A DNA stretch of 64,000 nt from Camelus ferus (taxonomy: Eukaryota), in the NCBI RefSeq assembly GCF_009834535.1, contig NC_045720.1:620001-684000 (forward strand). The letters run 5' to 3'. The position numbers and the translations under genes were made by a program. This document shows, one piece after another, positions 8,170 to 29,718 of this stretch. The notes beneath the pieces were generated by a model. It did not search any database, was not told the DNA's origin, and saw only the letters and a program-made list of their open reading frames with translations. The stretch's first letter is position 1. Every line of letters begins with the position of its first letter.

Positions 8170-10251
8170 TTAAACACCAGGGTAGGGTGGCAACTGAGTA
8201 GTGCCTGGGAGGTGGGGGCATTCTTTCACAGAGAAAGGCTTCAGCCTGTTTCTGTTGCAGGGATTCAGACCAAAAGAGAACTCGGATGGCGAAGAGAGTG
8301 CGGTCCTCAGCAGATGGCGTCTGGCCCCTCAGGAAGAGCCCCACCCCCACCCACCCCAGATTTCCCCACAGGCAGGAGGGGGAGGGGTGAGCCCAGGCAT
8401 GTGGAAGTTGCCAGGGAGGGAGGCAGGAGGCCTTTTCCAAGCTCACACCTGGACCTGGACGGCTCACTCTCCCTTAGTTCCCATGGCCAGCGCCTAGCAA
8501 GCCCAGCTGGCTGGCCCTGCCCCTCCCCAGCCTCAGCTCGATTTCTTCACCCGCCAAGCAAACAAGCTGCCCCAGCACAGGTCACAGCCGTCTTTGAACT
8601 TTGATTAAATTCTTAAGGCTAATCTCCCTTCCACAACGGCAAGCTCTGTGAGAGAAAGGCCCCTGTCTGTGATTTGCTCCCAAGGGCTCAGCACCAAGCC
8701 CAGTACTTGGCAGGCACTCAGTGAAGCTCCGTGAAGTAGCTGGATGAGCCAGGGTGCAGAGAAAGTGGAAGGTGGACAGAGCTGGTGATCATTCTGGATC
8801 CTGCCTGTCATCTGCCCAGGCAACAGTCACTGGCTTCCAGTTGTGTTCTGGTACTGGTGGGAGCCAGGAATGTGAGGGGGGCACAGCACAGACACCCTTG
8901 GCCGGAGCCACATGGTTTTCCCTTTTGCTGCTCCAGCTTGGACATGGCACTCTCCAGCCTAAGTAACACCTGAGTAACTATCCCAAGTTAAAGCCCCTCC
9001 GCTTGAAATACCTGGAGCGGTTTCTATTTTCCTAAACCTCAGGTCAGCAACAAACCAGTTTGTCCATATTGTCTATATTCCAGGCAACTTGCCAGAACGG
9101 GGCTATAGGGGAGCAAGGGAGCATCAAACGCAAGCCCGCTCTCAAGAAGCTCAAAATCCAGCGGGGATGAGATGTGTCTTACTCGTTCACGAGCGAGTAC
9201 TCTGAGGCTCTCCCTGCACTGGGAGTAATACCTCACCCACCGTGAATCCCAGGGGGACAAGCCAAGTTCACAGACCCTCCCAGGACAGCAGCCACAGCCA
9301 CTGTGCATCCAGCTCACAGAAGAGATACCATGAATTTGGGCCCCATGTGTGTCATCTGTAAAAGGGGTATCACTTGGTGGTGCTCAGATTTGAAATCCTG
9401 GGTGTGAACCGTCTACCACAGGACAGGCACATCGGGCGTAACTGTGAACAAAAGCAGACTGCAGGAGGGGCGGCTGCAGCTCCTAGGAACGCTTTGAACA
9501 GCACCCGGCCCATGGCAGGCACTCAGCAAACAGTAGGCGGCTACTCCCCAGCATAACAGCACCCACAGGACTCCAGGGCCCAGGAGACAGGAGGGGACAT
9601 GTTGGCTCCTCTCTCCTGGAGCTGGAGGGTTGAGGTAGGCCCTTGCAGATCTTTGCTTGCCTGGGGAAATGTCATCAAGTGTGCAGAGAGCTCTAGGGGA
9701 AAGCCTGAGCAGAAGCTTTAGTCCCCAGCAGAGGAAGGCTGAGTGGCTCCCCCACATGCCAGCTTCTTTGAAGGCCTTTTATGGCCAGCCAGGGTGGCCC
9801 AAGAGGCCTTACCCTGGCTCTAGCCCTTAGGGTTCTCATCCTACCAAGTGGGACCCATGCAGGGCAGGAATGGTTCCAGCAAGATGTCTTTAGAGCAGGC
9901 AAGTCCTGGGGGACAGGACAGCCCCTTCAAGGGCACAATGCAGGTATGGCTCTAGAACCTGCCCCTGCTTTCCCAGACCCTGCCCTCTCCCACGCCAGTT
10001 CATGCTTGTGTAGCTGGGTTAGCCTCCCATCCTGAGCTCTCAGCCCCGGTCACTCTCCCGTCTGAGCCCCAGTCCCAGCAAGAATTCAGAAACTGGGCAG
10101 CAGCCTTGAGGGGGCGCAACTGGCCTCCTGCAGCCCCATCACCCCTGCCCCTCTAACACAAGTTAGGCCTCAGCCGTGCCTCCCAACCCCCTCCCCAAGA
10201 CCCTGCAGTGAACTGGACGGCCCCACCCTCTTCTGCAGTGCCCTGCCCTCC

Positions 10252-11673
10252 ATGAAGGGCAGTGGCAGCAAAAACCGGACTAGAAAACCTTCATGGAGCA
10301 GGTGCGTGAATGCAGGGACAAGGGCTACCTGCTCTCCTCCAAGAAGAATGGCTCTGGGGCCTTCCCCAAAGTCTGCCCGACCTATGCCATGTGAGAGCAC
10401 ATGTGGCACAACTCAAAGCTGGCCTCTAACCTGCGACGCAAACACTGTACCATGGTGAGGTCGGCCTGCCTCCTCCCCATGGGCCCCGCCTCCAGCCCAG
10501 CCCCAGTGGCCCCTGTCCTAACTCCACTCAGGCACCCCTCAGGGCCTCTGGCTCCCTCCTGGTCCCACAACCTCCCTGAGGGCCAAGCCTCCTGCAGGCT
10601 GATCACTCCCAGTTTCCAGACGCCCTGAACATATAAGTTCTTGGATGAGGGGGGTCAGCGCTGGCCCCCAGAGATGCTGCCAACCCTACCTGGCCCAGCC
10701 AAGTTCCACAGTGAGCACAAAGAACAGAGGCCCCTCACGCCGCATCCTGCCCCGAGGGGCTGTGGTCTCCCCACAGGGGCCACCCCCAACCCCTGCAAGC
10801 AGCTATCAAGGCCACCTCCACCTCTGAGGCCCCACAGGCTCTCCCGCTAGTTCCTGCCCGTGAGATCCTGTCACTCAGTGTTGCCTACAAGCACCTAAAT
10901 GTGGTGGAAGGGACCCCGGGGCCAACCTGTCCCCATCCTGCCCACTCCAGGCTTGCACCCTTCCCCACCAGGGACCGTTATGCTCAGGCCCAACCCCATC
11001 CTGAGACCCCAGTCCAGTGCCTGGACAGCCCCTCCTTGGGACAATAGCAGGTGCAGGTGGGTGGGAGTCTGGCAGGTGCAAGAGACCTGCCAGAACAGCC
11101 AGCGCTCCTACTTGATGCTGAGTGCCAGGACCCCATCCGAGGCCTGCTCCAGCTGCAGCCCCAAGTGCACCTGGGCCTGCAGCAGGTGGCTAAGCACCAC
11201 GCACGCACTCTTCTGCACCCTGCTCGGTTTGTACCAGGTGTGACAGGCCCACGAGGGTGGGCAGGTGGGCAGCTCCTCAGCACCTCCTGCGCCCCACCCA
11301 CCACCATCTGACGGTCCCACTGCAATTGGTTGCAGAGAAGCTGGAGGAGTCTCAGCTCTCAGCGTCCCTGGATAACACGGAGCCCAGCTCAGACTCAGAT
11401 GCCCCAAGGCCCCTCCTGCAACTGCGGCGTCTGCAGCAACAGGGCGCCCTACCCAATGGCACCTCCGTGCCTGAGCACCCTGGGGCTCGCCCCAGACGAG
11501 GTGCGGGCTCTGCCGGGCTGGTGCTCTGGGGCTTGGAGGCCAGTCATGGGGCGCAGCGGGGTAGGTCCCTCCGGCATCGCTGTTGCTGTGCTCCGTGTCT
11601 GCCACCCAGAGCCTGCCTGGGCACCACCTGTTAACCGAGGGTGTGCAGGCAGGCCGGGGTGAGGCCAGATAAA
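10252..11673 (+). pseudogene. TSSK5: Unitary pseudogene of testis-specific serine kinase 5
   Basis: Exon remnants 10252-10454 (MKGSG.. / KTFMEQVRECRDKGYLLSSKKNGSGAFPKV..HNSKLASNLR), 10799-10903 (AAIK..REILSLSVAYKHLNV), 11076-11237 (VQETCQNSQRSYLML joined to ECQDPIRGLLQLQ..LGLQQVA) and 11336-~11673 (LDNTEP). Matches recalled TSSK5 orthologues and the syntenic position. Frameshift, stops at 10281, 10392 and 10848, no HRD or DFG motifs. Confidence 0.9.
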
Positions 11674-11676
11674 GCG

Positions 11677-11682
11677 TTTATT
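11677..11682 (-). terminator. AATAAA polyadenylation signal of HGH1
   Basis: tttatt on plus strand ~1.3 kb downstream of the HGH1 stop codon. Confidence 0.7.
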
Positions 11683-12958
11683 CTGTGGAGCCGAGGGTGT
11701 GGACTTCACAATACAGGAAGAGGGCCACAGGCCCTGGGGCACCTCGAAAAGAGTCCACATACCTACATGCCAGAGCTTTCATTTAATTGGGAGGGAAGGG
11801 GGAATAGAGAGGGACTACTGAGGAGGGAGATACCTGGCACCACAAAGAACCCAGCCTTGATGGGAGTGCGCAAGTGGAGCTACCTCCAGCTTTAAGGCAG
11901 TACCAGACTGAGACTTGTGGAGTCGGGAGTATTGGGAACTCTTGGGAAGAGAAGCTACCCTCTGGCACCAGGGTACAAGGGGCCTGGGAGGGCCAGTACA
12001 CAGGGGTCCTGTGCAAAAGATGGCACTAGGTTTGGTGGGAGGCTCTGGAAGAGAGTACAGTGGGGTGAGGGCCAAACAGACAGCCTACCAGTGACAGTCT
12101 TCAAGGCTTGGTGGCTGAAGAATTGGGGGTACCACACATGGAGCCAGGGGCTCCAAGGGGGCAGAGGGTGGTGGGGAAAAAACCTTGGACCATGGGCAAG
12201 GCTGCAGGCGTATCAGGGAGGCTCTCAGCATGGTAGGCAAGGGGTTCTGGGGAGCTGAGACTCAGGGAAGTTGACCAGGGAGAGGGCCTAGCTATTGGAA
12301 GAGGGCGAGGGCATCAGCTTAGTCCAGAACTGGGAAACAGGACTCGAGGAGCTTGCACAGGGCTGAGAACTGGGTTTGAGCAAGGTCAAGTGGGAAGGTG
12401 GAGAGGATGAGAGGGAGTGCTCCAGGGAGAGGCCAGGGGGATGCAGCCCTAGGAGGCTCCAGGACAGGTTGTGGCTGGTGAGAATCTCAACAAGTCAGCC
12501 CTTTGAGGCCGAGTCTCAGGCAGGGCAAGCTGAGGGCCCCAGGACAGGACTGGCAGCAAGGGGCACTGCAAGCACCTGGGTGCCCACCTACGCCCAGACC
12601 ACTGCAGCACCCCTGGGACTGGGAAGCTTCAGCTGACCCCTCCAGCTTGCAGTACTTTTCTGTCCAGCCTCATAGGACACCCCGAGGATGTACCTGAGCA
12701 AGTCATAGGGCCTGGCCAGCTCTGGTTGAACATTCCTTCTCTGAGCAACCAGCATTCTTGCTGGAAGCAACAGTGCCCTCAAAACTTCAGTGTTTCCTGA
12801 GCACTCGCTCTAGGGCCCTCAGCAAGGACCTGGAGCTTACAGGTGGCTCTGCTTCTCAGCAGCGCACAGCCTCAGAGCAAGGGGACCCGGAGGCCTGCCG
12901 GCAGCTGCAGATGGGTCTGGTCTGGGAAGCCTGGAGCTGGTGGCGGGCTTCAGGGGCC

Positions 12959-14709
12959 TCAGGTGGGTGCAGCTCCCTCTGCTTGTGGCTCTGGAGCCAG
13001 TTCCTGCTCCTGACGCTTCTGCGCACACTGCTCCTGGTCCTGGAGGTCCTGCTGCTGCAGCTCTCGCTCAATATCTTCGGGCACCTGCACCTCCAGCAGG
13101 TTCTCCATGCCGTGCTCCGGCTCGTCCCCAATAAGCACCTGCCAGCAGGGCAGGCAGGTGAGCAGCTGGCTAGCACACCACGCTCACCCACCACCCCCCT
13201 AGCCCCGCACCCACCTGGATGAGTTTCTCACAAGCCATCCGCACATCGGGCTCTGACTCCCAGCTGTGCAGCTCACGCAGGATCAGGTAGGCTCCCTGGT
13301 CTCTCACCTGCTTCCGACCAGGCGCCGTTGCTGTCAGCTGGGAGAGGACAGAGGTTACCCAGATGTTGTGTACTTGTGTGTGTTGCGGGGGGCATTAATG
13401 TAGCAGGACCGCTGCTCACCAGCATGATGGCCTCAATGAGCATTTTGCGGATGTCGGCATCAGACTCTCGCTGCTTGTCTGACGGCAGGTACTGCAGGTC
13501 AACAGGCAGCCCTAGGGGTGAATGTGGGAGTCACTGGGTCCCTATGTGGCCCCTGGGCTGATACGCCAGACCCTACCATTGTAAGCCAAATCTGTGCTTA
13601 GCTCCCTGCTGGAATGTTTCAGAAGAGGCCCTGACCTGGACACCTTCTCCCTCTCCCCTAATGGCCTCCCTTCCTGCCTAGCCAACCCTGAGGCTCAGCC
13701 CAAGCCACTCACGCTCCATCTCCTCCTCAGAGAAGTCCTCAGGCCCAGCCAAGGGCAGTAGCAAGAAGGGGAGAATGTCCACCTCGGGCCCAAGCAACCA
13801 CTCATGGTGTCCTGGGGGAAATAGGAATGGAGGCCAGTCCAGAGGGGCCCCAGTCCAGTCTATCCCCCCCCCCCATTCTCCGACATGGCAATTTCCCCAC
13901 CACCACTCACGGTGCTCGAAGCAGCAGTTTCGCAGTGTCCCCACCACCCCGCCCCTGCGCACCGAGGAGTCCGCGTATTGGGTAAGGGGCAGCAGCCGCT
14001 GGACCACGCACCTGGAGGGAAGGACCACTCAGTGCCGTCCCTTCTCACTTTCACCCCCTCCCAGCGAGCACCCTGGGCTTCACCTGTCGCGGTCTAGCAG
14101 GAAAGCGCGCGTGGCGGGACGCTGGCTGAGGTTAGAAAGCACAGGCCCCAGGTAGTGAAGGGGCGCGCGGGGGTTGTAGCCGGGAGTGCACAGCGCTCGA
14201 ACCAGCCGCTCCAGGCCCGTCTCCACCGGCTCCGCGGCCGCCAGCGCCGCCATCAGCGCAGCACACGGCGCCGGCTCGCGGCTGAGGTTAGCCAGCACGG
14301 CGGCCGCCTCTTCGGCCCAGGGCCACTGTGGGTCCAACGCGCAGCCCAGCAGGCGGGAGGGCAGCCCGGGCTCGGCCGCCAGCAGCGGATCGTACAGGCC
14401 GGGGTCGGCGGCCAGATTGACGAGCGCGCGAGCGGCGTCTCGGGCCGGGGCGGGAGCAGGGGCCACCGCGAGCTCGACCAGCGCCCGCAGCAGTGCCCCT
14501 TGGCCGGCCAGCAGCGTGCGGCCCGGCTCCGAGCCGGTCAGCGCCAGCACGTGCTGCGCCGCCGCCGCCTGCAGGTCACCCCGCGCTCCGAGCGCCAGGA
14601 AGGGCAGCAGCTTCGCAGCCGCCGCCTTCGGGCCGGCCTCTGGCATCGGCGACCCTACGGAAGCGAGGCTGCCGGCTGACGCGCCCGAGTCAGCCCCGGC
14701 GTCCACCAT
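12959..14709 (-). CDS. HGH1: Protein HGH1 homolog (FAM203A; eEF2 chaperone), 406 aa, 6 exons
   Basis: Exons 14709-14084, 14011-13911, 13811-13713, 13511-13420, 13337-13215, 13138-12959. All GT-AG, phases consistent, 1221 nt. Motifs KLLPFL..DLQAAA, SSVRRGGVVGTLRNCCF, LPVDLQYLP. Confidence 0.95.
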
Positions 14710-15060
14710 GCCGGTCGGTGCGCTCGGGTCAGCGCGCGTAGATCCGCCTGGCACCGCCGCGGCGCAGCGGCCCCGCCCACCACGGTAGCGGAAGCTGCAA
14801 CGGCCAATCCGAGGCTGTCGACTCTGCGCAGGGGGCGGGACCGCCGCTCGGAGGCGGGGCCACGCGGAGGCCGGGGGATTGTGGGATTGGGTGCCGGCCC
14901 GGAAGCCGCGCGCCTCAGTTGCCCGGCAGCGGTGGGGGTCCCGAGGCACGGACGCTGCGCCAGCTGTGGCGCCGTCGCAGGGGGTCCTGCCAGCCACCGA
15001 GAGCTGGCTGGTCACGTGGCCCTCTTCCTTCGCGGGCCGACGGAGATCCATCTTCACTGA
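13950..15060 (-). promoter_or_regulatory. CpG island / HGH1 promoter
   Basis: CpG-dense. CCAAT (~14804), GC boxes, ETS-like cggaag motifs. Confidence 0.75.
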
Positions 15061-15089
15061 AAGCGAAGCCAGACTGACTGCTGGTGTTA

Positions 15090-16130
15090 GACTAGCTTGT
15101 ATTCCCGGTATGATCTCCGTTTGGTCGGGAGACATTTTCACTTTTATGTATTGCTGTGTTCAGTTTGCTGAAGTTTTGTTTAGAATTTTTTACATCTCAG
15201 TCCATAAGGGATATTGATCTGTGGTTTTCTTTTCTTGTAATATCTTTGTCTGGTGTTGGGTAACATTGGCCTCAGAAGGACTGGGGGGAAAATTCCTCCT
15301 CTTGAATTTTCTGGAAGAGTTTGTACAACTAATGTTACTTCTTCCCTAAATGTTTGCTAGAATTCCCCGTGAAGCCATCTGGGCCTGAAGTTTTCTTTCT
15401 GGGAAGGTTTTTCAATTATAAATTCAATTCCTTTAATAGATACGTGTATGTTCAGGTTGTCATTTCCTTCTTGGGCGACTTTTGGTAATTTGGGTCTTTT
15501 AAGGAGTTGGTCCATTTCCTCTAAATTTTTTAATTAATTGGCACAAAATTCTTCATTATATTCCCTTACTGTCCTTTTAGTATATGTAGAGTGTTGTGGT
15601 ATCACCCGTCTCGTCGCTGATATTGGCAATTTGTGTCGTCTTTCTTTTTGTCAGTCTTGCCAGAGGTTTGTCAGTTTTACTAATCTTGTTAAAGAACTGC
15701 CTTTTGGATTTATTTTCTTTATTGCTTCCTTTTTCGATTTTATTGGTTTCTACTTTGACCTACTGTTTCCTTTCTTCTGCTTACTTTTTGAGTTTAATTT
15801 GCTGTTCTTTTTCTAGTTTCTTAGGGTAGAAGCTGAGGTCATTGATTTGAGATCTTTTTTGTTGTTGTTACTATAACTTTTTTAAAGTTGAAGTATAGTT
15901 GATTTACAATGTTTCAGGTGCACAGCAAAGTGATTCAGTTATATATGTATATATATATTTTCAGATTATTTTCCATTATAGGCTATTAACAAGATATCGA
16001 ATATAGTTCCAGGTGCTCTACAGTAGGTCCCTGTTATTTTATTCTTCTTTTCTAATACAGAAGGTTTCCCCCCATTTATTATCTGACTTATGGGTTATGT
16101 TACGTACTTTTACATAGGTTAAAAACTCCT
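15090..16130 (-). mobile_element. LINE-1 fragments (ORF2 piece plus a younger L1 3'-end fragment ~15880-16050)
   Basis: T-rich plus strand. Minus translation PDQTEIIPGIQ resembles L1 ORF2 HDQVGFIPGMQ. aagtatagttgatttacaatgtt is a typical artiodactyl L1 3' end. Confidence 0.8.
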
Positions 16131-24100: not shown

Positions 24101-27100
24101 AGGGCAGCATCAACTGTGGTAACTGAGGTGGGAAATCTGGGGAACAGGCGGCCTTTGGGGAAACCCGACACCCCAGATGCTCTCCATGGGACTCAGCCTC
24201 CCATCCTGGAGCAGAGACACCAACAGGAGAGGGACAGTAGGAGTTCAGAGAGGGGCTGTTGAGGCCTTGGATAGAGGCCATAGCGGCTGGAGGGGTCAGT
24301 GACCCACCTAGGAAGGTAGGAGGACCAGGTCTGTGTGCCAGACAAGGCCTATCTGGGCATTTGGATGTGAGAGTGTAGGCAGACAGTGCCTTGCAAGAGG
24401 CTAGCTCTCAGACAAAGTCCGCAGGGGGCTCCCCAGCCGACATCTTCTCTAGGGAGGGGTACGCAGGCACAGCCAGCTGGCAGAGGCTCTGGCTTTGCCC
24501 AGTGCTGCTCTGGGGTCCTTGGCTCTCTGCAGCTGGGTCCCAGAGTGCAAGGATGCAGGGCACACAGAGCAGCAGCACTGGAACTGGGCCAGGGGCGCGG
24601 GGCTGCGGGTGGGCATGGCCCTTGGGTCAGATTTAGACACAAAGGTTTGCGGCAAAGGGAAGATGGGGTACACAAGAAGGGTCCCCACAGGGAGGGAAGT
24701 GCCTCTAGGGAGAGCAAGGGGCTCCCACCTTGTAGGGCTGCATGGTGGCGGGAAAGAAGCCCCCGAGGTTGGAGAGAAGCTCCTGGGGCCGCCTCTTCGG
24801 TGGCAGGGGGATCTGGGAATGGGACAGGGCTCAGAGCCAAGCTTGGACTCCAGAGTCCCTGCAGCTCTGCCCTTGGCTGGGCAGGACCCCCACCTGCCCA
24901 GGCCCCTCACCCTATGCTGCAGGTGGGAGGACAGGGGGTCCGGGGCCACAGGCTTCTCCCTGCGGAGCCGCTCCGACTGCAGCTGCAGGTCCAGACTGAG
25001 GCCCAGCTCACAGCTCAAGGAGGAGCGAGCCAGCAGCTAGGGCCCAGGAAGAGGAGTCAGAGGCGAGGGACAGGGATCCCAAGGTGAGGGCAGAGGGGTG
25101 GGAGGGGTGGGAGAGGTGGGAAGCCTCACCTGGGATGCTCTGCTGTGCACCCTCTGGTGGTGGGGTGGGACAGGCACGGGCACTCGGGGAGGGCGGGCAA
25201 AGCGCCGGCCCAGAGCCCCCAGGTCCTGTGGTGGCAGGGTCATTGACGCTGGGGGGGCTTCAGTGCAGTCCCCAGCCTGTCCGAGGCTAGGGGCGTCTCT
25301 GGGCAGGTCGCACACTTCCCAGGTCTCTCTCTCCACAGTGAAGGGCAAGGCACTGCACTGCTGGGACTCTCTTCCAGTATACTTGCCCTGCCAGTGGGGG
25401 AGGGGGGGCAGAAGGGCAGTGTCAGAGGCACAGGGCAAAGTGGGGGGCTGGGGGAGGCCCCATACTCACCAACGGGCCGGGGCCGTAGATCAGACGGAGG
25501 TAGTTATCGAAGGCCTCCTGGCACTGCCCGGAGAGTGGGGCCTGGGCGGCCGGGCTCACCAGCCCCAGTCTCAGCTGCTGAAGGTCTTGGTCCCGGGCAA
25601 CCAGGGCTTCCAAGTCCTGGGGTGGGGGTCAGGGGTCAGCCTGTTCTTCCTCGAGCCTTGCCGCGTGCTGCCCAGACAACCACAGGGATCCCAGGCTGCC
25701 CCGGGGACTGAGGGGAGTGGCTTGAGCCTGGGCAGGGGGCAGGGCTGGGGCACCGGGGTGGTGAGGGGGTCAGGACCCACCCCACCTCCTCCAACACTGG
25801 CTGCTGAGGTGCTGCCGTCTGGCGATGGATGAAGGACAAGGCTGTGCTGCAGACAGGGACGGGCATGGGTGGGTCACGAGGTGGCACTACCAGTGGGACA
25901 GGGCAGAGGTGGGACAAGGACCCGGGAGGTGGGTGGCCAAGCCCCTGGTGGGGAACAACCAACTGCCAGGAGTGGGGAGGCCAGGACTGGGACAGGCCTG
26001 CAGTGGCCCAAGGGGCCTGGGAGCCCCAGGGTCTCATGCTGGGGACACAGCCTGGCCCTGACCCAGGGAGCTGGGCGGGGACCTCCAGGACAGTTCAGCC
26101 AGGCTGGCTAGCAGACCTGAGGCTGGCCGCCCCATGCAGGTTGGCAAGCCTCCGCAGCTGGTCTGAGGTCAGCGACTCCTGGCTCTTCAGGGGCAGTGGA
26201 GGGTCGTCTACCATGTCGGCGACCTTCCCATACAGCTTCTGAGCAGGGAGAGGAGCCTGGAGCCCTGGCCTTGCAGGCTCATCTGCTGACAGCAGCCCCA
26301 CCCTGCCCACGTGGCACTCAGTGCACACCTTAACCAGGTAAGATGTGGGCAGGTAGAGCATGTGGGACACCAGGCAGAGGCGGGAGCCCAGTGCCAGCAC
26401 CAGATCCCCGCTGTTGTTGCAGAAGGTTAGGGCCTGAGGGGCACCATTCAGCTGCAGGAGCCTGGAGGGATGTTCAGGGCTAGAGTCCAGCCCTGCTCCA
26501 CGGAGTGGAAAACCGAGGCAGCAGCAGAGGCAAGGCTCTCTCCCCTATCAGGCTGCTGGGCTCTGGTTGAGAGCAGAGGCAGGAGAACCCAGAGGGCCAC
26601 CCCCACGCTCCTGACCCTCCCTTTGCCCTCCCAGCCCCAGCCCACCGCAGCAGGCGGTTCTCTGCTGTCCAGATGCGGATGGTGCAGTCCAGGCTGGAGC
26701 AGGCGTACAGCTTAAGCGTGGGACAGCAGCACAGGCCTGGGGGCCAGGGCTCAGGGTCAGGGACCAGATCCATACGGTGGCCTGGGCGTCACCTTTGCCC
26801 TGTCCCCTCACCGGTGATGTGGTCTGTGGGGTCGTCCTGGGGCTGGTGATCATAGCGTGGGCGGCTGTCCAGGCCGAACTGCACCAAGCCATAGGTGGCA
26901 CTGTGGGGGTCCTCAAAGCCCACAGTGACGTGCTTCCCAAGTGCACAGAGTACCACGGCCGGGTGGCAGCAGGAGAAGGTGCGAAGCAGGCTCAGGCTCT
27001 CCTCAGCGTAGGGGAAGACGCGCCACATCTTCACGGTCAAGTCTCCCCCTTGGGGGCGGGAGCCATGGTTGGGGGGGGAAGCCGGGGTTCCCAGGCCACC

Positions 27101-29718
27101 TCCTGGGGGAGGAGACGTACTGACCGGAGGACACGATGCTGTTCCAGGTGGACTCGATGGCGGTGACGGGTCCTGGGCTGTGTGCCACCGTGTGGAAGAC
27201 TCTCTTCGATGAGCGCAAGTCGAGCACAGACAGGGCGCCGTCGGTGTGCCCCACCACGGGCAGGTACCTATGGGTGGCAGCAGCCTGTTGGCGCGGGCCC
27301 TGTCGCCTTGCCCAGCCCTCACTGTCTCTGGCACCCACCGGTTCTTGTCCTTCCAGGCCCAGGCCATGTCAGTGGGGCACAGCTCGCCCTCGAGCTGGCG
27401 CACGATCTCCCATGTGGCAAATGCACTACTGGGGTCTGTGAGGTGGCTGTAGAGGTGCAGGCAGCAGGGCCTGGACGCAGGGGGTGGCGGCGGGCACAGG
27501 CGGTGCAGCACCCTCATGGGGCAGCGAGCCGCGTTGGCACACAGCAGGTGTCCCGCACGCGTCAGCAGCCACAGTGCTTCGTGAGGCAGGCAGTAGGCCA
27601 CGGCAGCCACGCAGTCTGCAGGCTCAAGCAGAAGCGCGCTCACGGTGCGTCCCGTCGAGACGGACACCAGGTAGACCGAGCCATCGGCGCACGCGCACAC
27701 GAGGCGCACAGGCAGCGGCGGGTGCAGGGGCATGGGCAGCGTGGGCGCCACCTGCAGGTGCAGCACCGGCGCTGACAGCTGCACCAACGGCGAGTAGAGC
27801 TCACGCAGGCGCCACAGCTCCAGGCTGCTGGCACGCAAGGAGAGCAAGGGCCAGCCAGGGCCGGCGGGGGCCAGCAGGCGGTCCACGCTCTCGGACGACA
27901 CGCCCCGGCCCCAGCAGCTCAGCGCCACCTCGCCCACCTGCGCCGCTGCCTGCAGGTCCCACGTGCGCAGCGTCCCGTCCTGTGAAGCTGACAGCAGCAG
28001 GGTTGTGTTGGGGAGCACAGCCACTGCAGTCACCGGGCCTGCAGGAGGGACGCGGGTCACTGCACATCAGGGACTAAGGAAGGGGAGCCGTCAGTCAGGG
28101 TGGTGGCCAGGAGCAGCGTGGCCAGGAGTCAAGGAATTCCATGCCCAGAGCCCCTTAAGGCAGAAGGCTGTGCACAAGGTGGAGGGAGACCAGGCCTCAA
28201 GAACCACGGTGGCGCGGCGCACCTGTGTGGCCCACGAACACCATCCGGATCTGCCAGTCAGCCTCCCACACCTTCACCGTGCTGTCCCGGGAAGCTGTCA
28301 CCATGGCCTCTACATCCCTGCAGTACGCCAGGTCGCAGATGGTGCTGAGGGGTGAGAGGGAGGCCCGGCGGACTTAGCACCGCCTTGTGTGTGTGTACCT
28401 GCACCCCTGCCATGACTGGATTTCCTTCGCAGACTCGCCTCATGAGTCCCCCGTCCCTGGGCCCCCTCACGTTTTGTGCAGATCTCGACGCACATCTATG
28501 AGAACCCAGGCTTGCAGATCAAAGGTGAGCACAGCTGAGCCGTAGGCTGCGAAGCAGCACGGGACCTGATGGGGAGGCTGAGGCCCCAGAGCCAGACGCG
28601 CAAGTGCACCTGCCTGGCCCGGCAGTGGCTGCAGAGGTGACCTGTGCGGAACCAGGCAGCGGCCACCTGAACGGAACTTCCAAAGCGCCAGGCTGCCGTC
28701 TGCCTCGGCCACTAGCAGCAGCCCGAGATCGGGCACTGGCAGGCAGCAGATGGGCTCGCAGCCTGGCACCCTGTGCACCCCTGGTTTACTCAGCCACAGT
28801 AAGCTTAAGTCAGATCTCAGTATGGCCAGACCCACTGGGCCCCAGCCCACAAAGCGGCCCACAGTGCCCAGCGGACCCAGCACTGCCACTAGCCCCGTGA
28901 GAGCAGCAGGAGCCGGCAGCTTCTTCTGCATCCAGCCGTCCTCCCTGTGCAAGTGCAGGTGGCCCGCACCATCCAGCATCACAAAGCGTCGGCCCACCGG
29001 GTCCTGTGCCACCGAACGTAGCCCGGGTGCCACCTCCAGGAGGCGCAGTGGCTCCAGCCCGTGGGTCAAACGCGCCACGCGCAACTCAGCTTTCTTCTCC
29101 TGTAGGCCACGACCAGCAAGCCTTAGTCAACCTCATCGGGGCCAGGGGTTGGGGGAGAGCAGTGCACCCGCCTCTGGGAGCCAGGAGGATCAGGGCTGGG
29201 GTCCTGCCGGGGCCCTTAGTAGAAGAGCCAGGCCAGGAAAGAGGCCTTGAGCCAGGTACCCTGAGCAAGCCACACCTTTTCCACGAAGTTCTGGAGGCCT
29301 GTACGCAGAAGCAGCCACAACTGGCGGGCACGGGCGCTCGGGCTCATGTTCTGCCACTGTGAGTTGCTGGTAAAAAGCCGTGGGGCCGGCTCTGAAAACG
29401 ATGACGCTGCAGGCCAGCAGGAGAAGCCCTGTCGCTGTTCGGCTGTGGACCCCCAGCCCTGGAGGTCGGGGGCAGCCAAGGGCCCTCCTGAGGGCCCTGC
29501 CAGGTGAGGGGACTGCCCCGGGAGTGCTGCGTTCCCGGGGAACAGGACCTGCGCCACAGGGGTCGAGGCCAGGCCACCTCACCATTCCTCTCCTTGAGCA
29601 GCCCCGGGTCCGGGACATCATAGATGTCAGCGTCATACAGGTCCAGGTCCAGGTCTGAAAGCAGGAGGTCGCCTTCTGCTGTAAAGGGGTTGCTCGCATC
29701 CAACACATTCGACTCCAT
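21183..29718 (-). CDS. WDR97: WD repeat-containing protein 97 (KIAA1875), 1617 aa, 24 coding exons
   Basis: Exons 29718-29583, 29406-29276, 29099-28471, 28344-28223, 28038-27339, 27267-27125, 27048-26812, 26736-26646, 26461-26329, 26238-26117, 25846-25786, 25616-25470, 25387-25130, 25036-24911, 24812-24729, 23922-23845, 23692-23501, 23427-23233, 23133-22936, 22834-22713, 22640-22478, 22157-21637, 21550-21489, 21385-21183. 4854 nt, all GT-AG, phases consistent. WD motifs (VTASRDSTVKVW, LSASQDGTLRTW, CSSLDCTIRIW) and C-terminus LQRYFLP..DPDSYS. Confidence 0.92.
22876..22933. repeat. Perfect 2 x 29-bp tandem duplication in WDR97 intron 19
   Basis: ggggcggggcctctcgagggctggggccc at 22876-22904 and 22905-22933. 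Confidence 0.9.

What the first reader, a model, noticed from the sequence alone, without database searches (positions are those of the whole stretch)
11076..11237. Deletion excises the whole catalytic core of TSSK5
Seen: QNSQRSYLML (subdomain V region) is joined at 11120/11121 directly and out of frame to ECQDPIRGLLQL (subdomain XI). No HRDLKxEN, DFG or APE-coding sequence occurs anywhere in 10252-11673. Inference: roughly 150 codons plus introns were removed in one event, possibly via a short (g)ag microhomology (CTG GAG / GAG TGC). This makes a clean shared-derived marker and rules out any kinase activity.
Basis: partly seen in the sequence, partly recalled or inferred. Interest (0 to 1): 0.72.

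Follow-up and report, generated by a model that had tools for sequence, protein, structure and literature searches.

The report
Camelid TSSK5 pseudogene lacks kinase core
In camels and alpaca the testis kinase gene TSSK5 is a long-dead pseudogene in which one old deletion of about 1.3 kb removed the whole catalytic centre; this is real and shared by all camelids examined, but it is ordinary gene decay.

Summary
The window is Camelus ferus: positions 9000-13709 are 100% identical to GCA_009834535.1. Positions 10252-11634 (+) hold the unprocessed remnant of TSSK5, in its ancestral place, tail to tail with HGH1.

Aligned to ibex, cattle, blue whale and dingo, the window is colinear except for one clean break at 11119-11121. 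There, 1,343/1,344/1,287/1,785 bp are missing. The lost DNA is the 3' three quarters of exon 3, exons 4-6 and introns 3-6. That equals cattle TSSK5 residues 122-273, which include HRD, DFG and APE. The junction is out of frame.

The same junction is present in dromedary, Bactrian camel and alpaca assemblies. It is also present in 19 independent DNA runs, so it is not an assembly collapse and it predates the camel-llama split.

The deletion is only one of at least nine disabling lesions shared by all camelids. The exon-1 TGA is Camelus-only and an exon-7 TGA is alpaca-only.

Strict microhomology at the junction is 1 nt, not the proposed (g)ag. The 3' breakpoint coincides with the intron 6/exon 7 boundary; this is unexplained and probably chance.

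The scan had already noted this dead gene on this same window (s1-149091). Low interest: an independent loss of a gene already known as a unitary pseudogene in catarrhine primates.

The parts
10252..10455 (+). TSSK5 exon 1 remnant. It holds the ancestral ATG at 10252 and is 1 nt shorter than ibex between that ATG and the kinase frame. In the ancestral frame there is a TAG at 10281-10283 (CAG>TAG, all camelids). A downstream ATG lies at 10293, followed by the glycine loop GSGAF. There is a TGA at 10392-10394 (CGA>TGA, Camelus only; alpaca keeps CGA). The donor GT is at 10456.
   Evidence: 56-66% identity to residues 1-69 of mouse, cattle, sheep and donkey TSSK5
10799..10903 (+). TSSK5 exon 2 remnant (AIK ... 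REILSLSVAYKHLNV). The intron 1 acceptor is changed from cag to caa at 10796-10798. There is a 2-bp deletion at 10833/10834, a TAG at 10848-10850 (AAG>TAG) and a 1-bp deletion in the C run at 10857-10859. All are shared by the four camelids.
11076..11120 (+). 5' quarter of exon 3 (VQ--ETCQNSQRSYLML), with a shared 6-bp deletion (codons LY) after 11081. It ends at the deletion junction.
11119..11121 (+). Deletion junction. The ancestral left side is ...TACTTGGTGCTG|GAGCTGG (exon 3). The ancestral right side is ...CCGCAG|AGTGCCAGG (last base of intron 6 | first base of exon 7). The G at 11120 fits both sides. Missing: 1,343 bp (ibex), 1,344 bp (cattle), 1,287 bp (blue whale), 1,785 bp (dingo).
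11121..11237 (+). Exon 7 remnant ((E)CQDPIRGLLQLQPQVHLGLQQVAKH..., kinase subdomain XI). It is in a different frame from the exon 3 remnant. A shared 17-bp deletion lies at 11199/11200. The donor GT is at 11238.
   Evidence: 66-73% identity to residues about 271-300
11336..11634 (+). Exon 8 remnant (C-terminal tail EKLEESQLSASLDNTEPSSDSD...). The end coordinate is approximate.
14080..15141 (-). Large coding exon of HGH1, the neighbour that converges on TSSK5. It served as the synteny anchor for fetching orthologous loci.
   Evidence: DUF383; 100% to Camelus ferus HGH1

Best explanation
This is the unitary, unprocessed pseudogene of TSSK5 in a camel. In the common ancestor of living camelids, one genomic deletion of about 1.3 kb joined codon 121 in exon 3 (kinase subdomain V) to the first base of exon 7 (subdomain XI). 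Only 0-1 nt of homology lies at the joint, which is the signature of ordinary end joining after a double-strand break, or of replication slippage.

The deletion removed 152 codons: the catalytic loop HRD, the DFG and APE motifs (the activation segment) and subdomains VIa to X. It also shifted the frame. Together with at least eight other shared lesions, the locus cannot make a kinase. Since the camel-alpaca split it has drifted neutrally.

Shown: the deletion, its borders, its sharing among species, the other lesions, and neutral divergence.
Inferred: the repair mechanism, the single-event origin, and that the gene was already dead or died in the camelid stem.
For: - Identity and synteny. The gene lies 2.4 kb from HGH1, in convergent orientation, with a WD40-repeat gene beyond (probably WDR97, named from memory). 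The ibex, cattle and dingo loci have the same arrangement with a Pkinase gene. A peptide from that ibex gene leads to proteins named TSSK5, including mouse TSSK5.
- Deletion. There is one gap with identical borders against four outgroups. Cattle residues 122-273, with HRD171, DFG191 and APE216, are absent.
- Not an artefact. Four chromosome-level assemblies of four camelid species are colinear across 11120. Nineteen DNA runs from seven studies hold all sampled 31-mers of 10200-11700. Raw reads and two independent Logan contigs cross the junction with no loose ends.
- Age. The junction is base-for-base the same in alpaca.
- Other shared lesions: two TAG codons, four small frameshifting deletions (including a 17-bp one), a 6-bp in-frame deletion and a lost acceptor site.
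- Neutrality. Camel-alpaca divergence is 4.18% in the exon remnants and 3.85% outside them.
- No gene is called at this place in any of the four camelid loci. No camelid is among the 120 best TSSK5 homologues.
Against: - That the 1.3 kb went in one event cannot be proven. Several nested deletions would leave the same end state.
- The 3' breakpoint falls exactly on the intron 6/exon 7 boundary. I estimate a chance of roughly 1-2% for a random breakpoint. This is unexplained and hints at another mechanism.
- A second TSSK5 copy elsewhere in camelid genomes was not searched exhaustively.
- RNA libraries hold the locus, so some transcription is possible. They show only unspliced, colinear contigs.
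Confidence: 0.93

Rival explanations
1. Assembly collapse or mis-assembly: the catalytic exons exist in the animal but were dropped from this assembly.
For: The region is GC-rich (62%), which can cause short-read dropouts.
Against: The junction is the same in four independent chromosome-level assemblies, three of them recent. Nineteen runs hold every sampled word across it. Raw Illumina reads and two independent Logan contigs of 5.8 and 7.2 kb cross it with zero differences and no loose ends.
Confidence: 0.01
2. RNA-templated deletion. A transcript spliced from a cryptic site in exon 3 to the normal acceptor of exon 7 was reverse-transcribed and recombined with the gene, as in reverse-transcriptase-mediated intron loss. 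This would explain why the 3' breakpoint is exactly the exon 7 boundary.
For: The retained sequence starts at the first base of exon 7, within the 1-nt ambiguity, in all outgroup comparisons. A random breakpoint would rarely land there.
Against: The removed segment begins GAGCTG or GGAGCT in all four outgroups. This is not a GT or GC donor, so the 'intron' would be GA-AG or GG-CA. Introns 1, 2 and 7 are all retained, whereas cDNA-mediated loss usually takes neighbouring introns cleanly. The coincidence is post hoc.
Confidence: 0.04
3. A 3-nt (G-AG) microhomology-mediated deletion gave an in-frame CTG-GAG-TGC fusion, followed by a separate 1-bp loss.
For: The left flank is CTG|GAG and the right flank is caG|AG, so a GAG overlap is possible on paper. 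The flanks also share an imperfect GCTG(G)AG / GCAG-AG match.
Against: It needs two events where one suffices. All four camelids already carry CTGAGTGCC, so no intermediate is seen.
Confidence: 0.1

Closest known systems
Human TSSK5P, the unitary pseudogene of TSSK5 in catarrhine primates (PMC2864566; PMC7401350)
   Same: The same gene at the same syntenic place (8q24.3 in human, chr15 in mouse; beside HGH1 in all loci read here). It is unprocessed, with introns kept, has no working copy, and is disabled by stops and frameshifts.
   Different: It is an independent loss in a different order, so the camelid lesions cannot be inherited from the primate ones. According to PMC7401350, the human copy still reads through its first 101 codons and was lost after the platyrrhine-catarrhine split. 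The camelid copy has a 1.3-kb deletion of the catalytic core and was dead before the camel-llama split. That review treats TSSK5 as present in non-primate mammals.
Functional TSSK5 of mouse, cattle, sheep and dog (CAMK-group testis-specific serine kinase, Pfam PF00069)
   Same: Exons 1, 2, 7 and 8 and the start of exon 3 are recognisable at 50-73% protein identity, with the same intron positions.
   Different: Residues 122-273 are missing, including HRD, DFG and APE, and the remaining exons carry stops and frameshifts.
Small genomic deletions made by non-homologous or microhomology-mediated end joining
   Same: A clean junction with no filler bases and 1 nt of shared sequence.
   Different: Nothing distinctive, apart from the breakpoint's coincidence with a splice acceptor.

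Membership tests
Unitary (unprocessed) pseudogene of TSSK5 | Lies at the orthologous, syntenic position of the functional gene | tested here: met
   It converges on HGH1, with a WD40-repeat gene beyond (probably WDR97). Ibex, cattle and dingo have the same arrangement with an annotated Pkinase gene. In Kogia, MROH1 lies on the other side.
Unitary (unprocessed) pseudogene of TSSK5 | Homology to TSSK5 specifically, with introns retained | tested here: met
   The ibex orthologue's exon 3 retrieves proteins named TSSK5, including mouse. The window aligns exon by exon and intron by intron with ibex and whale. tblastn E-values reach 1e-25.
Unitary (unprocessed) pseudogene of TSSK5 | Disabling lesions in the reading frame | tested here: met
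   Stop codons at 10281, 10392 and 10848. Frameshifts at about 10268, 10833, 10858 and 11199. The 1.3-kb deletion at 11120. A lost acceptor at 10796-10798.
Unitary (unprocessed) pseudogene of TSSK5 | No functional copy elsewhere in the genome | tested here: inconclusive
   No camelid is among the 120 best of 556 TSSK5 homologues. No copy lies elsewhere in the 64-kb window. No other scan note on this genome mentions one. The whole genome could not be searched.
Active protein kinase (Pfam PF00069 Pkinase) | Catalytic loop HRDxKxxN, DFG and APE motifs | tested here: not met
   Absent from all sense frames of 10252-11673. No Pfam hit for any piece. Residues 122-273 of cattle TSSK5 are unmatched.
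Shared-derived (synapomorphic) indel of Camelidae | Identical junction in Camelini and Lamini, absent in outgroups | tested here: met
   Present in Camelus ferus, the Bactrian camel, C. dromedarius and Vicugna pacos. Absent in ibex, cattle, blue whale and dingo. Lama was not examined.
Reverse-transcriptase-mediated intron loss | Removed segment bounded by usable splice signals; precise loss of whole introns only | tested here: not met
   The 3' end is a true acceptor. The 5' end is GA/GG in all outgroups, and 51 codons of exon 3 are lost too.

The most novel reading that the evidence does not exclude
TSSK5, described in reviews as conserved in non-primate mammals, has been lost at least three times independently: in catarrhine primates, in camelids and in cetaceans (the blue whale and Kogia copies read here also carry stops and lost motifs). 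In camelids the core deletion may have been templated by an aberrantly spliced transcript, given the breakpoint exactly at the exon 7 acceptor. If both held, this would be a rare documented case of RNA-mediated exon-plus-intron loss in a mammal gene. It would also be evidence that the basal TSSK is broadly dispensable.
Probability: 0.05. Interest if true: 0.5.

Novelty: new member of a known kind. Interest (0 to 1): 0.27.

Why it matters
It shows that TSSK5 loss is not a primate peculiarity. The gene was dead in the ancestor of camels and llamas, and it looks dead in two cetaceans as well. That weakens the idea, put forward in PMC7401350, that a primate-specific paralogue (TSSK1B) had to replace it. 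It fits the doubt stated in the same review that mouse TSSK5 is an active kinase.

For genome annotation, it explains why no TSSK5 gene model exists in camelid assemblies. As a phylogenetic marker it is clean but redundant. Nothing here opens a new question.

Tried and rejected
- Pfam scans of the short exon pieces gave nothing useful; the pieces are too short.
- PDB sequence searches of the pieces were uninformative. Exon 1 gave spurious summed hits to PRDM9 zinc-finger repeats, and the exon 7 piece gave no hit. I therefore did not spend the single representative search on a camel fragment and used the intact ibex exon 3 instead.
- Repeat search around the junction found only short chance repeats and nothing flanking the breakpoint.
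- The alpaca HGH1 isoform X2 was not on record. I reached isoform X1 through cluster members.
- The RNA-templated deletion was considered and rejected for lack of a donor signal.
- Assembly collapse was considered and rejected.
- RNA libraries gave only unspliced colinear contigs. Genomic DNA carry-over cannot be excluded, so no claim about expression is made.

Full report
**What is in the window**

On the + strand, frame 3 reads an exon 1 that is TSSK5-like: MEQVRECRDKGYLLSSKKNGSGAFPKVCPTYAM, then TGA, then EHMWHNSKLASNLRRKHCTM, followed by a GT donor. Further on there is a degraded exon 2 (AIK...REILSLSVAYKHLNV). Frame 3 gives VQETCQNSQRSYLML up to 11120. From 11121 the homologous reading continues in another frame as ECQDPIRGLLQLQPQVHLGLQQVAKH.

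**Which gene and which genome**

A large ORF at 14080-15141 (-) carries DUF383 and is 100% identical to Camelus ferus HGH1. Through HGH1 proteins I fetched the orthologous loci of these species:
- Capra ibex (L001) and blue whale (L002)
- alpaca (L003), dromedary (L004), Bactrian-type camel (L005) and wild camel (L006)
- later cattle (L007), dingo (L008) and Kogia (L009)

Window 9000-13709 is 100% identical to L006, which is GCA_009834535.1.

In ibex, cattle and dingo a gene with a Pkinase domain converges on HGH1 exactly where the camel remnant lies. The peptide of ibex exon 3, searched against 1.8 billion representatives, gave a full-length relative. The homologues of that relative are named testis-specific serine/threonine-protein kinase 5, including the mouse protein. 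The identification as TSSK5 therefore rests on tested synteny and homology, not on memory.

**The deletion**

blastn of window 9000-14000 against the ibex and whale loci is colinear, with one break. The left block ends at 11114-11120 and the right block starts at 11117. The break skips about 1.3 kb of the outgroup. Cattle and dingo give the same picture, with both blocks meeting at 11120.

In a six-species alignment, the four camelids have one gap in which ibex has 1,343 bases and the whale 1,287. Cattle has 1,344 and dingo 1,785.

From the ibex and cattle exon structure, the lost DNA is:
- exon 3 from codon 122 onwards
- introns 3-6
- exons 4, 5 and 6

That is cattle residues 122-273, or 152 codons, plus the first base of the split codon 274. 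It includes HRD (171), DFG (191) and APE (216). Because 457 coding bases are gone, the junction is out of frame.

tblastn of four TSSK5 proteins finds only residues 1-69, 70-106, 271-300 and the tail in the window. Neither the deleted DNA nor the exon 4-6 peptides have a credible match anywhere in the 64 kb. No sense frame of 10252-11673 has HRDxKxxN, DFG or APE.

**Breakpoints**

The ancestral left side is ...TACTTGGTGCTG|GAGCTGG. The ancestral right side is ...CCGCAG|AGTGCCAGG in ibex and whale, and ...CCACAG|AATGCCAGG in cattle and dingo. The camel reads TACTTGATGCTGAGTGCCAGG.

The G at 11120 fits both sides, so strict microhomology is 1 nt, with no filler bases. This is the usual look of end joining.

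It would then need a further 1-bp loss to give the observed sequence. That is possible, but it needs one more event.

The retained right side starts exactly at the first base of exon 7. I estimate that a random breakpoint would do this about 1-2% of the time. I therefore considered an RNA-templated deletion from an aberrant splice. However, the removed segment starts GA or GG in every outgroup, which is not a usable donor, and introns 1, 2 and 7 are all retained. I regard the coincidence as unexplained and probably chance.

**Not an artefact, and old**

Alpaca (95.1% identity), dromedary (98.8%) and Bactrian camel (99.98%) are colinear with the window across 11120, with no extra sequence. The junction is base-for-base the same.

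Nineteen DNA runs from seven studies hold all sampled 31-mers of 10200-11700. Sampled raw reads of two 2026 WGS runs, and Logan contigs of two other runs, cross the junction with no differences and no loose ends.

The deletion therefore predates the split of camels and llamas. I did not date that split here.

**Other lesions**

Shared by all four camelids:
- one base fewer between the ancestral ATG (10252) and the kinase frame
- TAG at 10281-10283 in the ancestral frame
- intron 1 acceptor changed from cag to caa (10796-10798)
- 2-bp deletion at 10833/10834
- TAG at 10848-10850
- 1-bp deletion near 10858
- 6-bp deletion after 11081
- 17-bp deletion at 11199/11200

Camelus only: TGA at 10392-10394, where alpaca has CGA.

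Alpaca only: TGA in exon 7, where the camel has CGA at 11138-11140.

The order of the shared lesions cannot be recovered. The deletion may or may not have been the first hit.

Camel-alpaca divergence is 4.18% in the exon remnants and 3.85% outside them. This means no constraint since the split.

No gene is called at this place in any of the four camelid loci.

**Expression**

RNA-seq libraries, several labelled as reproductive system, hold the locus, but only as unspliced, colinear contigs. One contig (10805-11653) crosses the junction and both flanking introns. Deeper contigs run from about 11076 to about 14226 and are continuous with the last HGH1 exon. Contigs have no strand, and DNA carry-over cannot be excluded. 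I make no claim beyond 'no spliced TSSK5 transcript seen'.

**Comparison with what is known**

TSSK5 is a known unitary pseudogene in humans and other catarrhines (PMC2864566; PMC7401350). [quoted passage not shown] It also notes that mouse TSSK5 may not be an active kinase.

Full-text searches found one paper that holds both 'TSSK5' and 'camel', a study of abalone TSSK1-like judged irrelevant from its title and not read. The other hits did not appear to describe a non-primate loss; only PMC7401350 and PMC2864566 were read.

The camelid loss is thus a new instance of a familiar kind of event. An earlier follow-up of this scan, on the exon 1 finding of the same window (s1-149091), reached the same conclusion. 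I re-derived it independently here.

**Verdict**

The biology is ordinary gene decay, and interest is low.

Noticed in passing
L002:12300-15700 (blue whale) and L009:12300-15600 (Kogia breviceps), minus strand of the loci: TSSK5 also looks dead in cetaceans. The blue whale has stops in exon 5 (GL*NS) and exon 7 (RP*AR), RDLN in place of RDLK, and ALE in place of APE. Kogia has FSF for DFG, ARE for APE, a stop in exon 7 (HH*RL), and no gene called between HGH1 and MROH1. Both lose IVH at the end of exon 3 (SGM...). The two stop positions differ, so whether the loss is shared is open. A vaquita (Phocoena sinus) protein model does exist (P0382).
   Followed up: partly
window 11076-14226: RNA-seq contigs of 2-3 kb, at 3-8 times the depth of the pseudogene's 5' half, run continuously from the last HGH1 exon through the intergenic DNA into TSSK5 exons 8 and 7. 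They end near the deletion junction (11076, 11133, 11314 and 11775 in four runs). This could be a long HGH1 3' extension antisense to the pseudogene. The strand is unknown.
   Followed up: partly
window 11669-11686: The element AGATAAAGCGTTTATTCT is also present in ibex. It reads AATAAA on the minus strand, so it is a candidate poly(A) signal for the convergent HGH1 transcript, or a variant signal for TSSK5.
   Followed up: no
window 12420-12588: This stretch matches the alternative C-terminal exon of a cattle TSSK5 isoform (…SQAGPAEGPQ…GTGSKGHCKH). It contains stops in the camel and is also recognisable in ibex, whale and Kogia.
   Followed up: no
window 10482-10522 (L004 dromedary equivalent): There is a dromedary-specific 41-bp deletion in intron 1 and a 3-bp insertion in exon 8. 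C. ferus and the Bactrian camel share a 1-bp deletion near 11581. These are small lineage markers within Camelus.
   Followed up: no
window 11865: An A>G difference appears in three RNA-library contigs (X24, X25, X28) against the window. It is most likely a polymorphism or a species difference between samples.
   Followed up: no
window 26789-28060 (-): A large WD40-repeat exon, probably WDR97 (a name recalled from memory, not tested). It is the next gene beyond HGH1, as in all the other loci.
   Followed up: no
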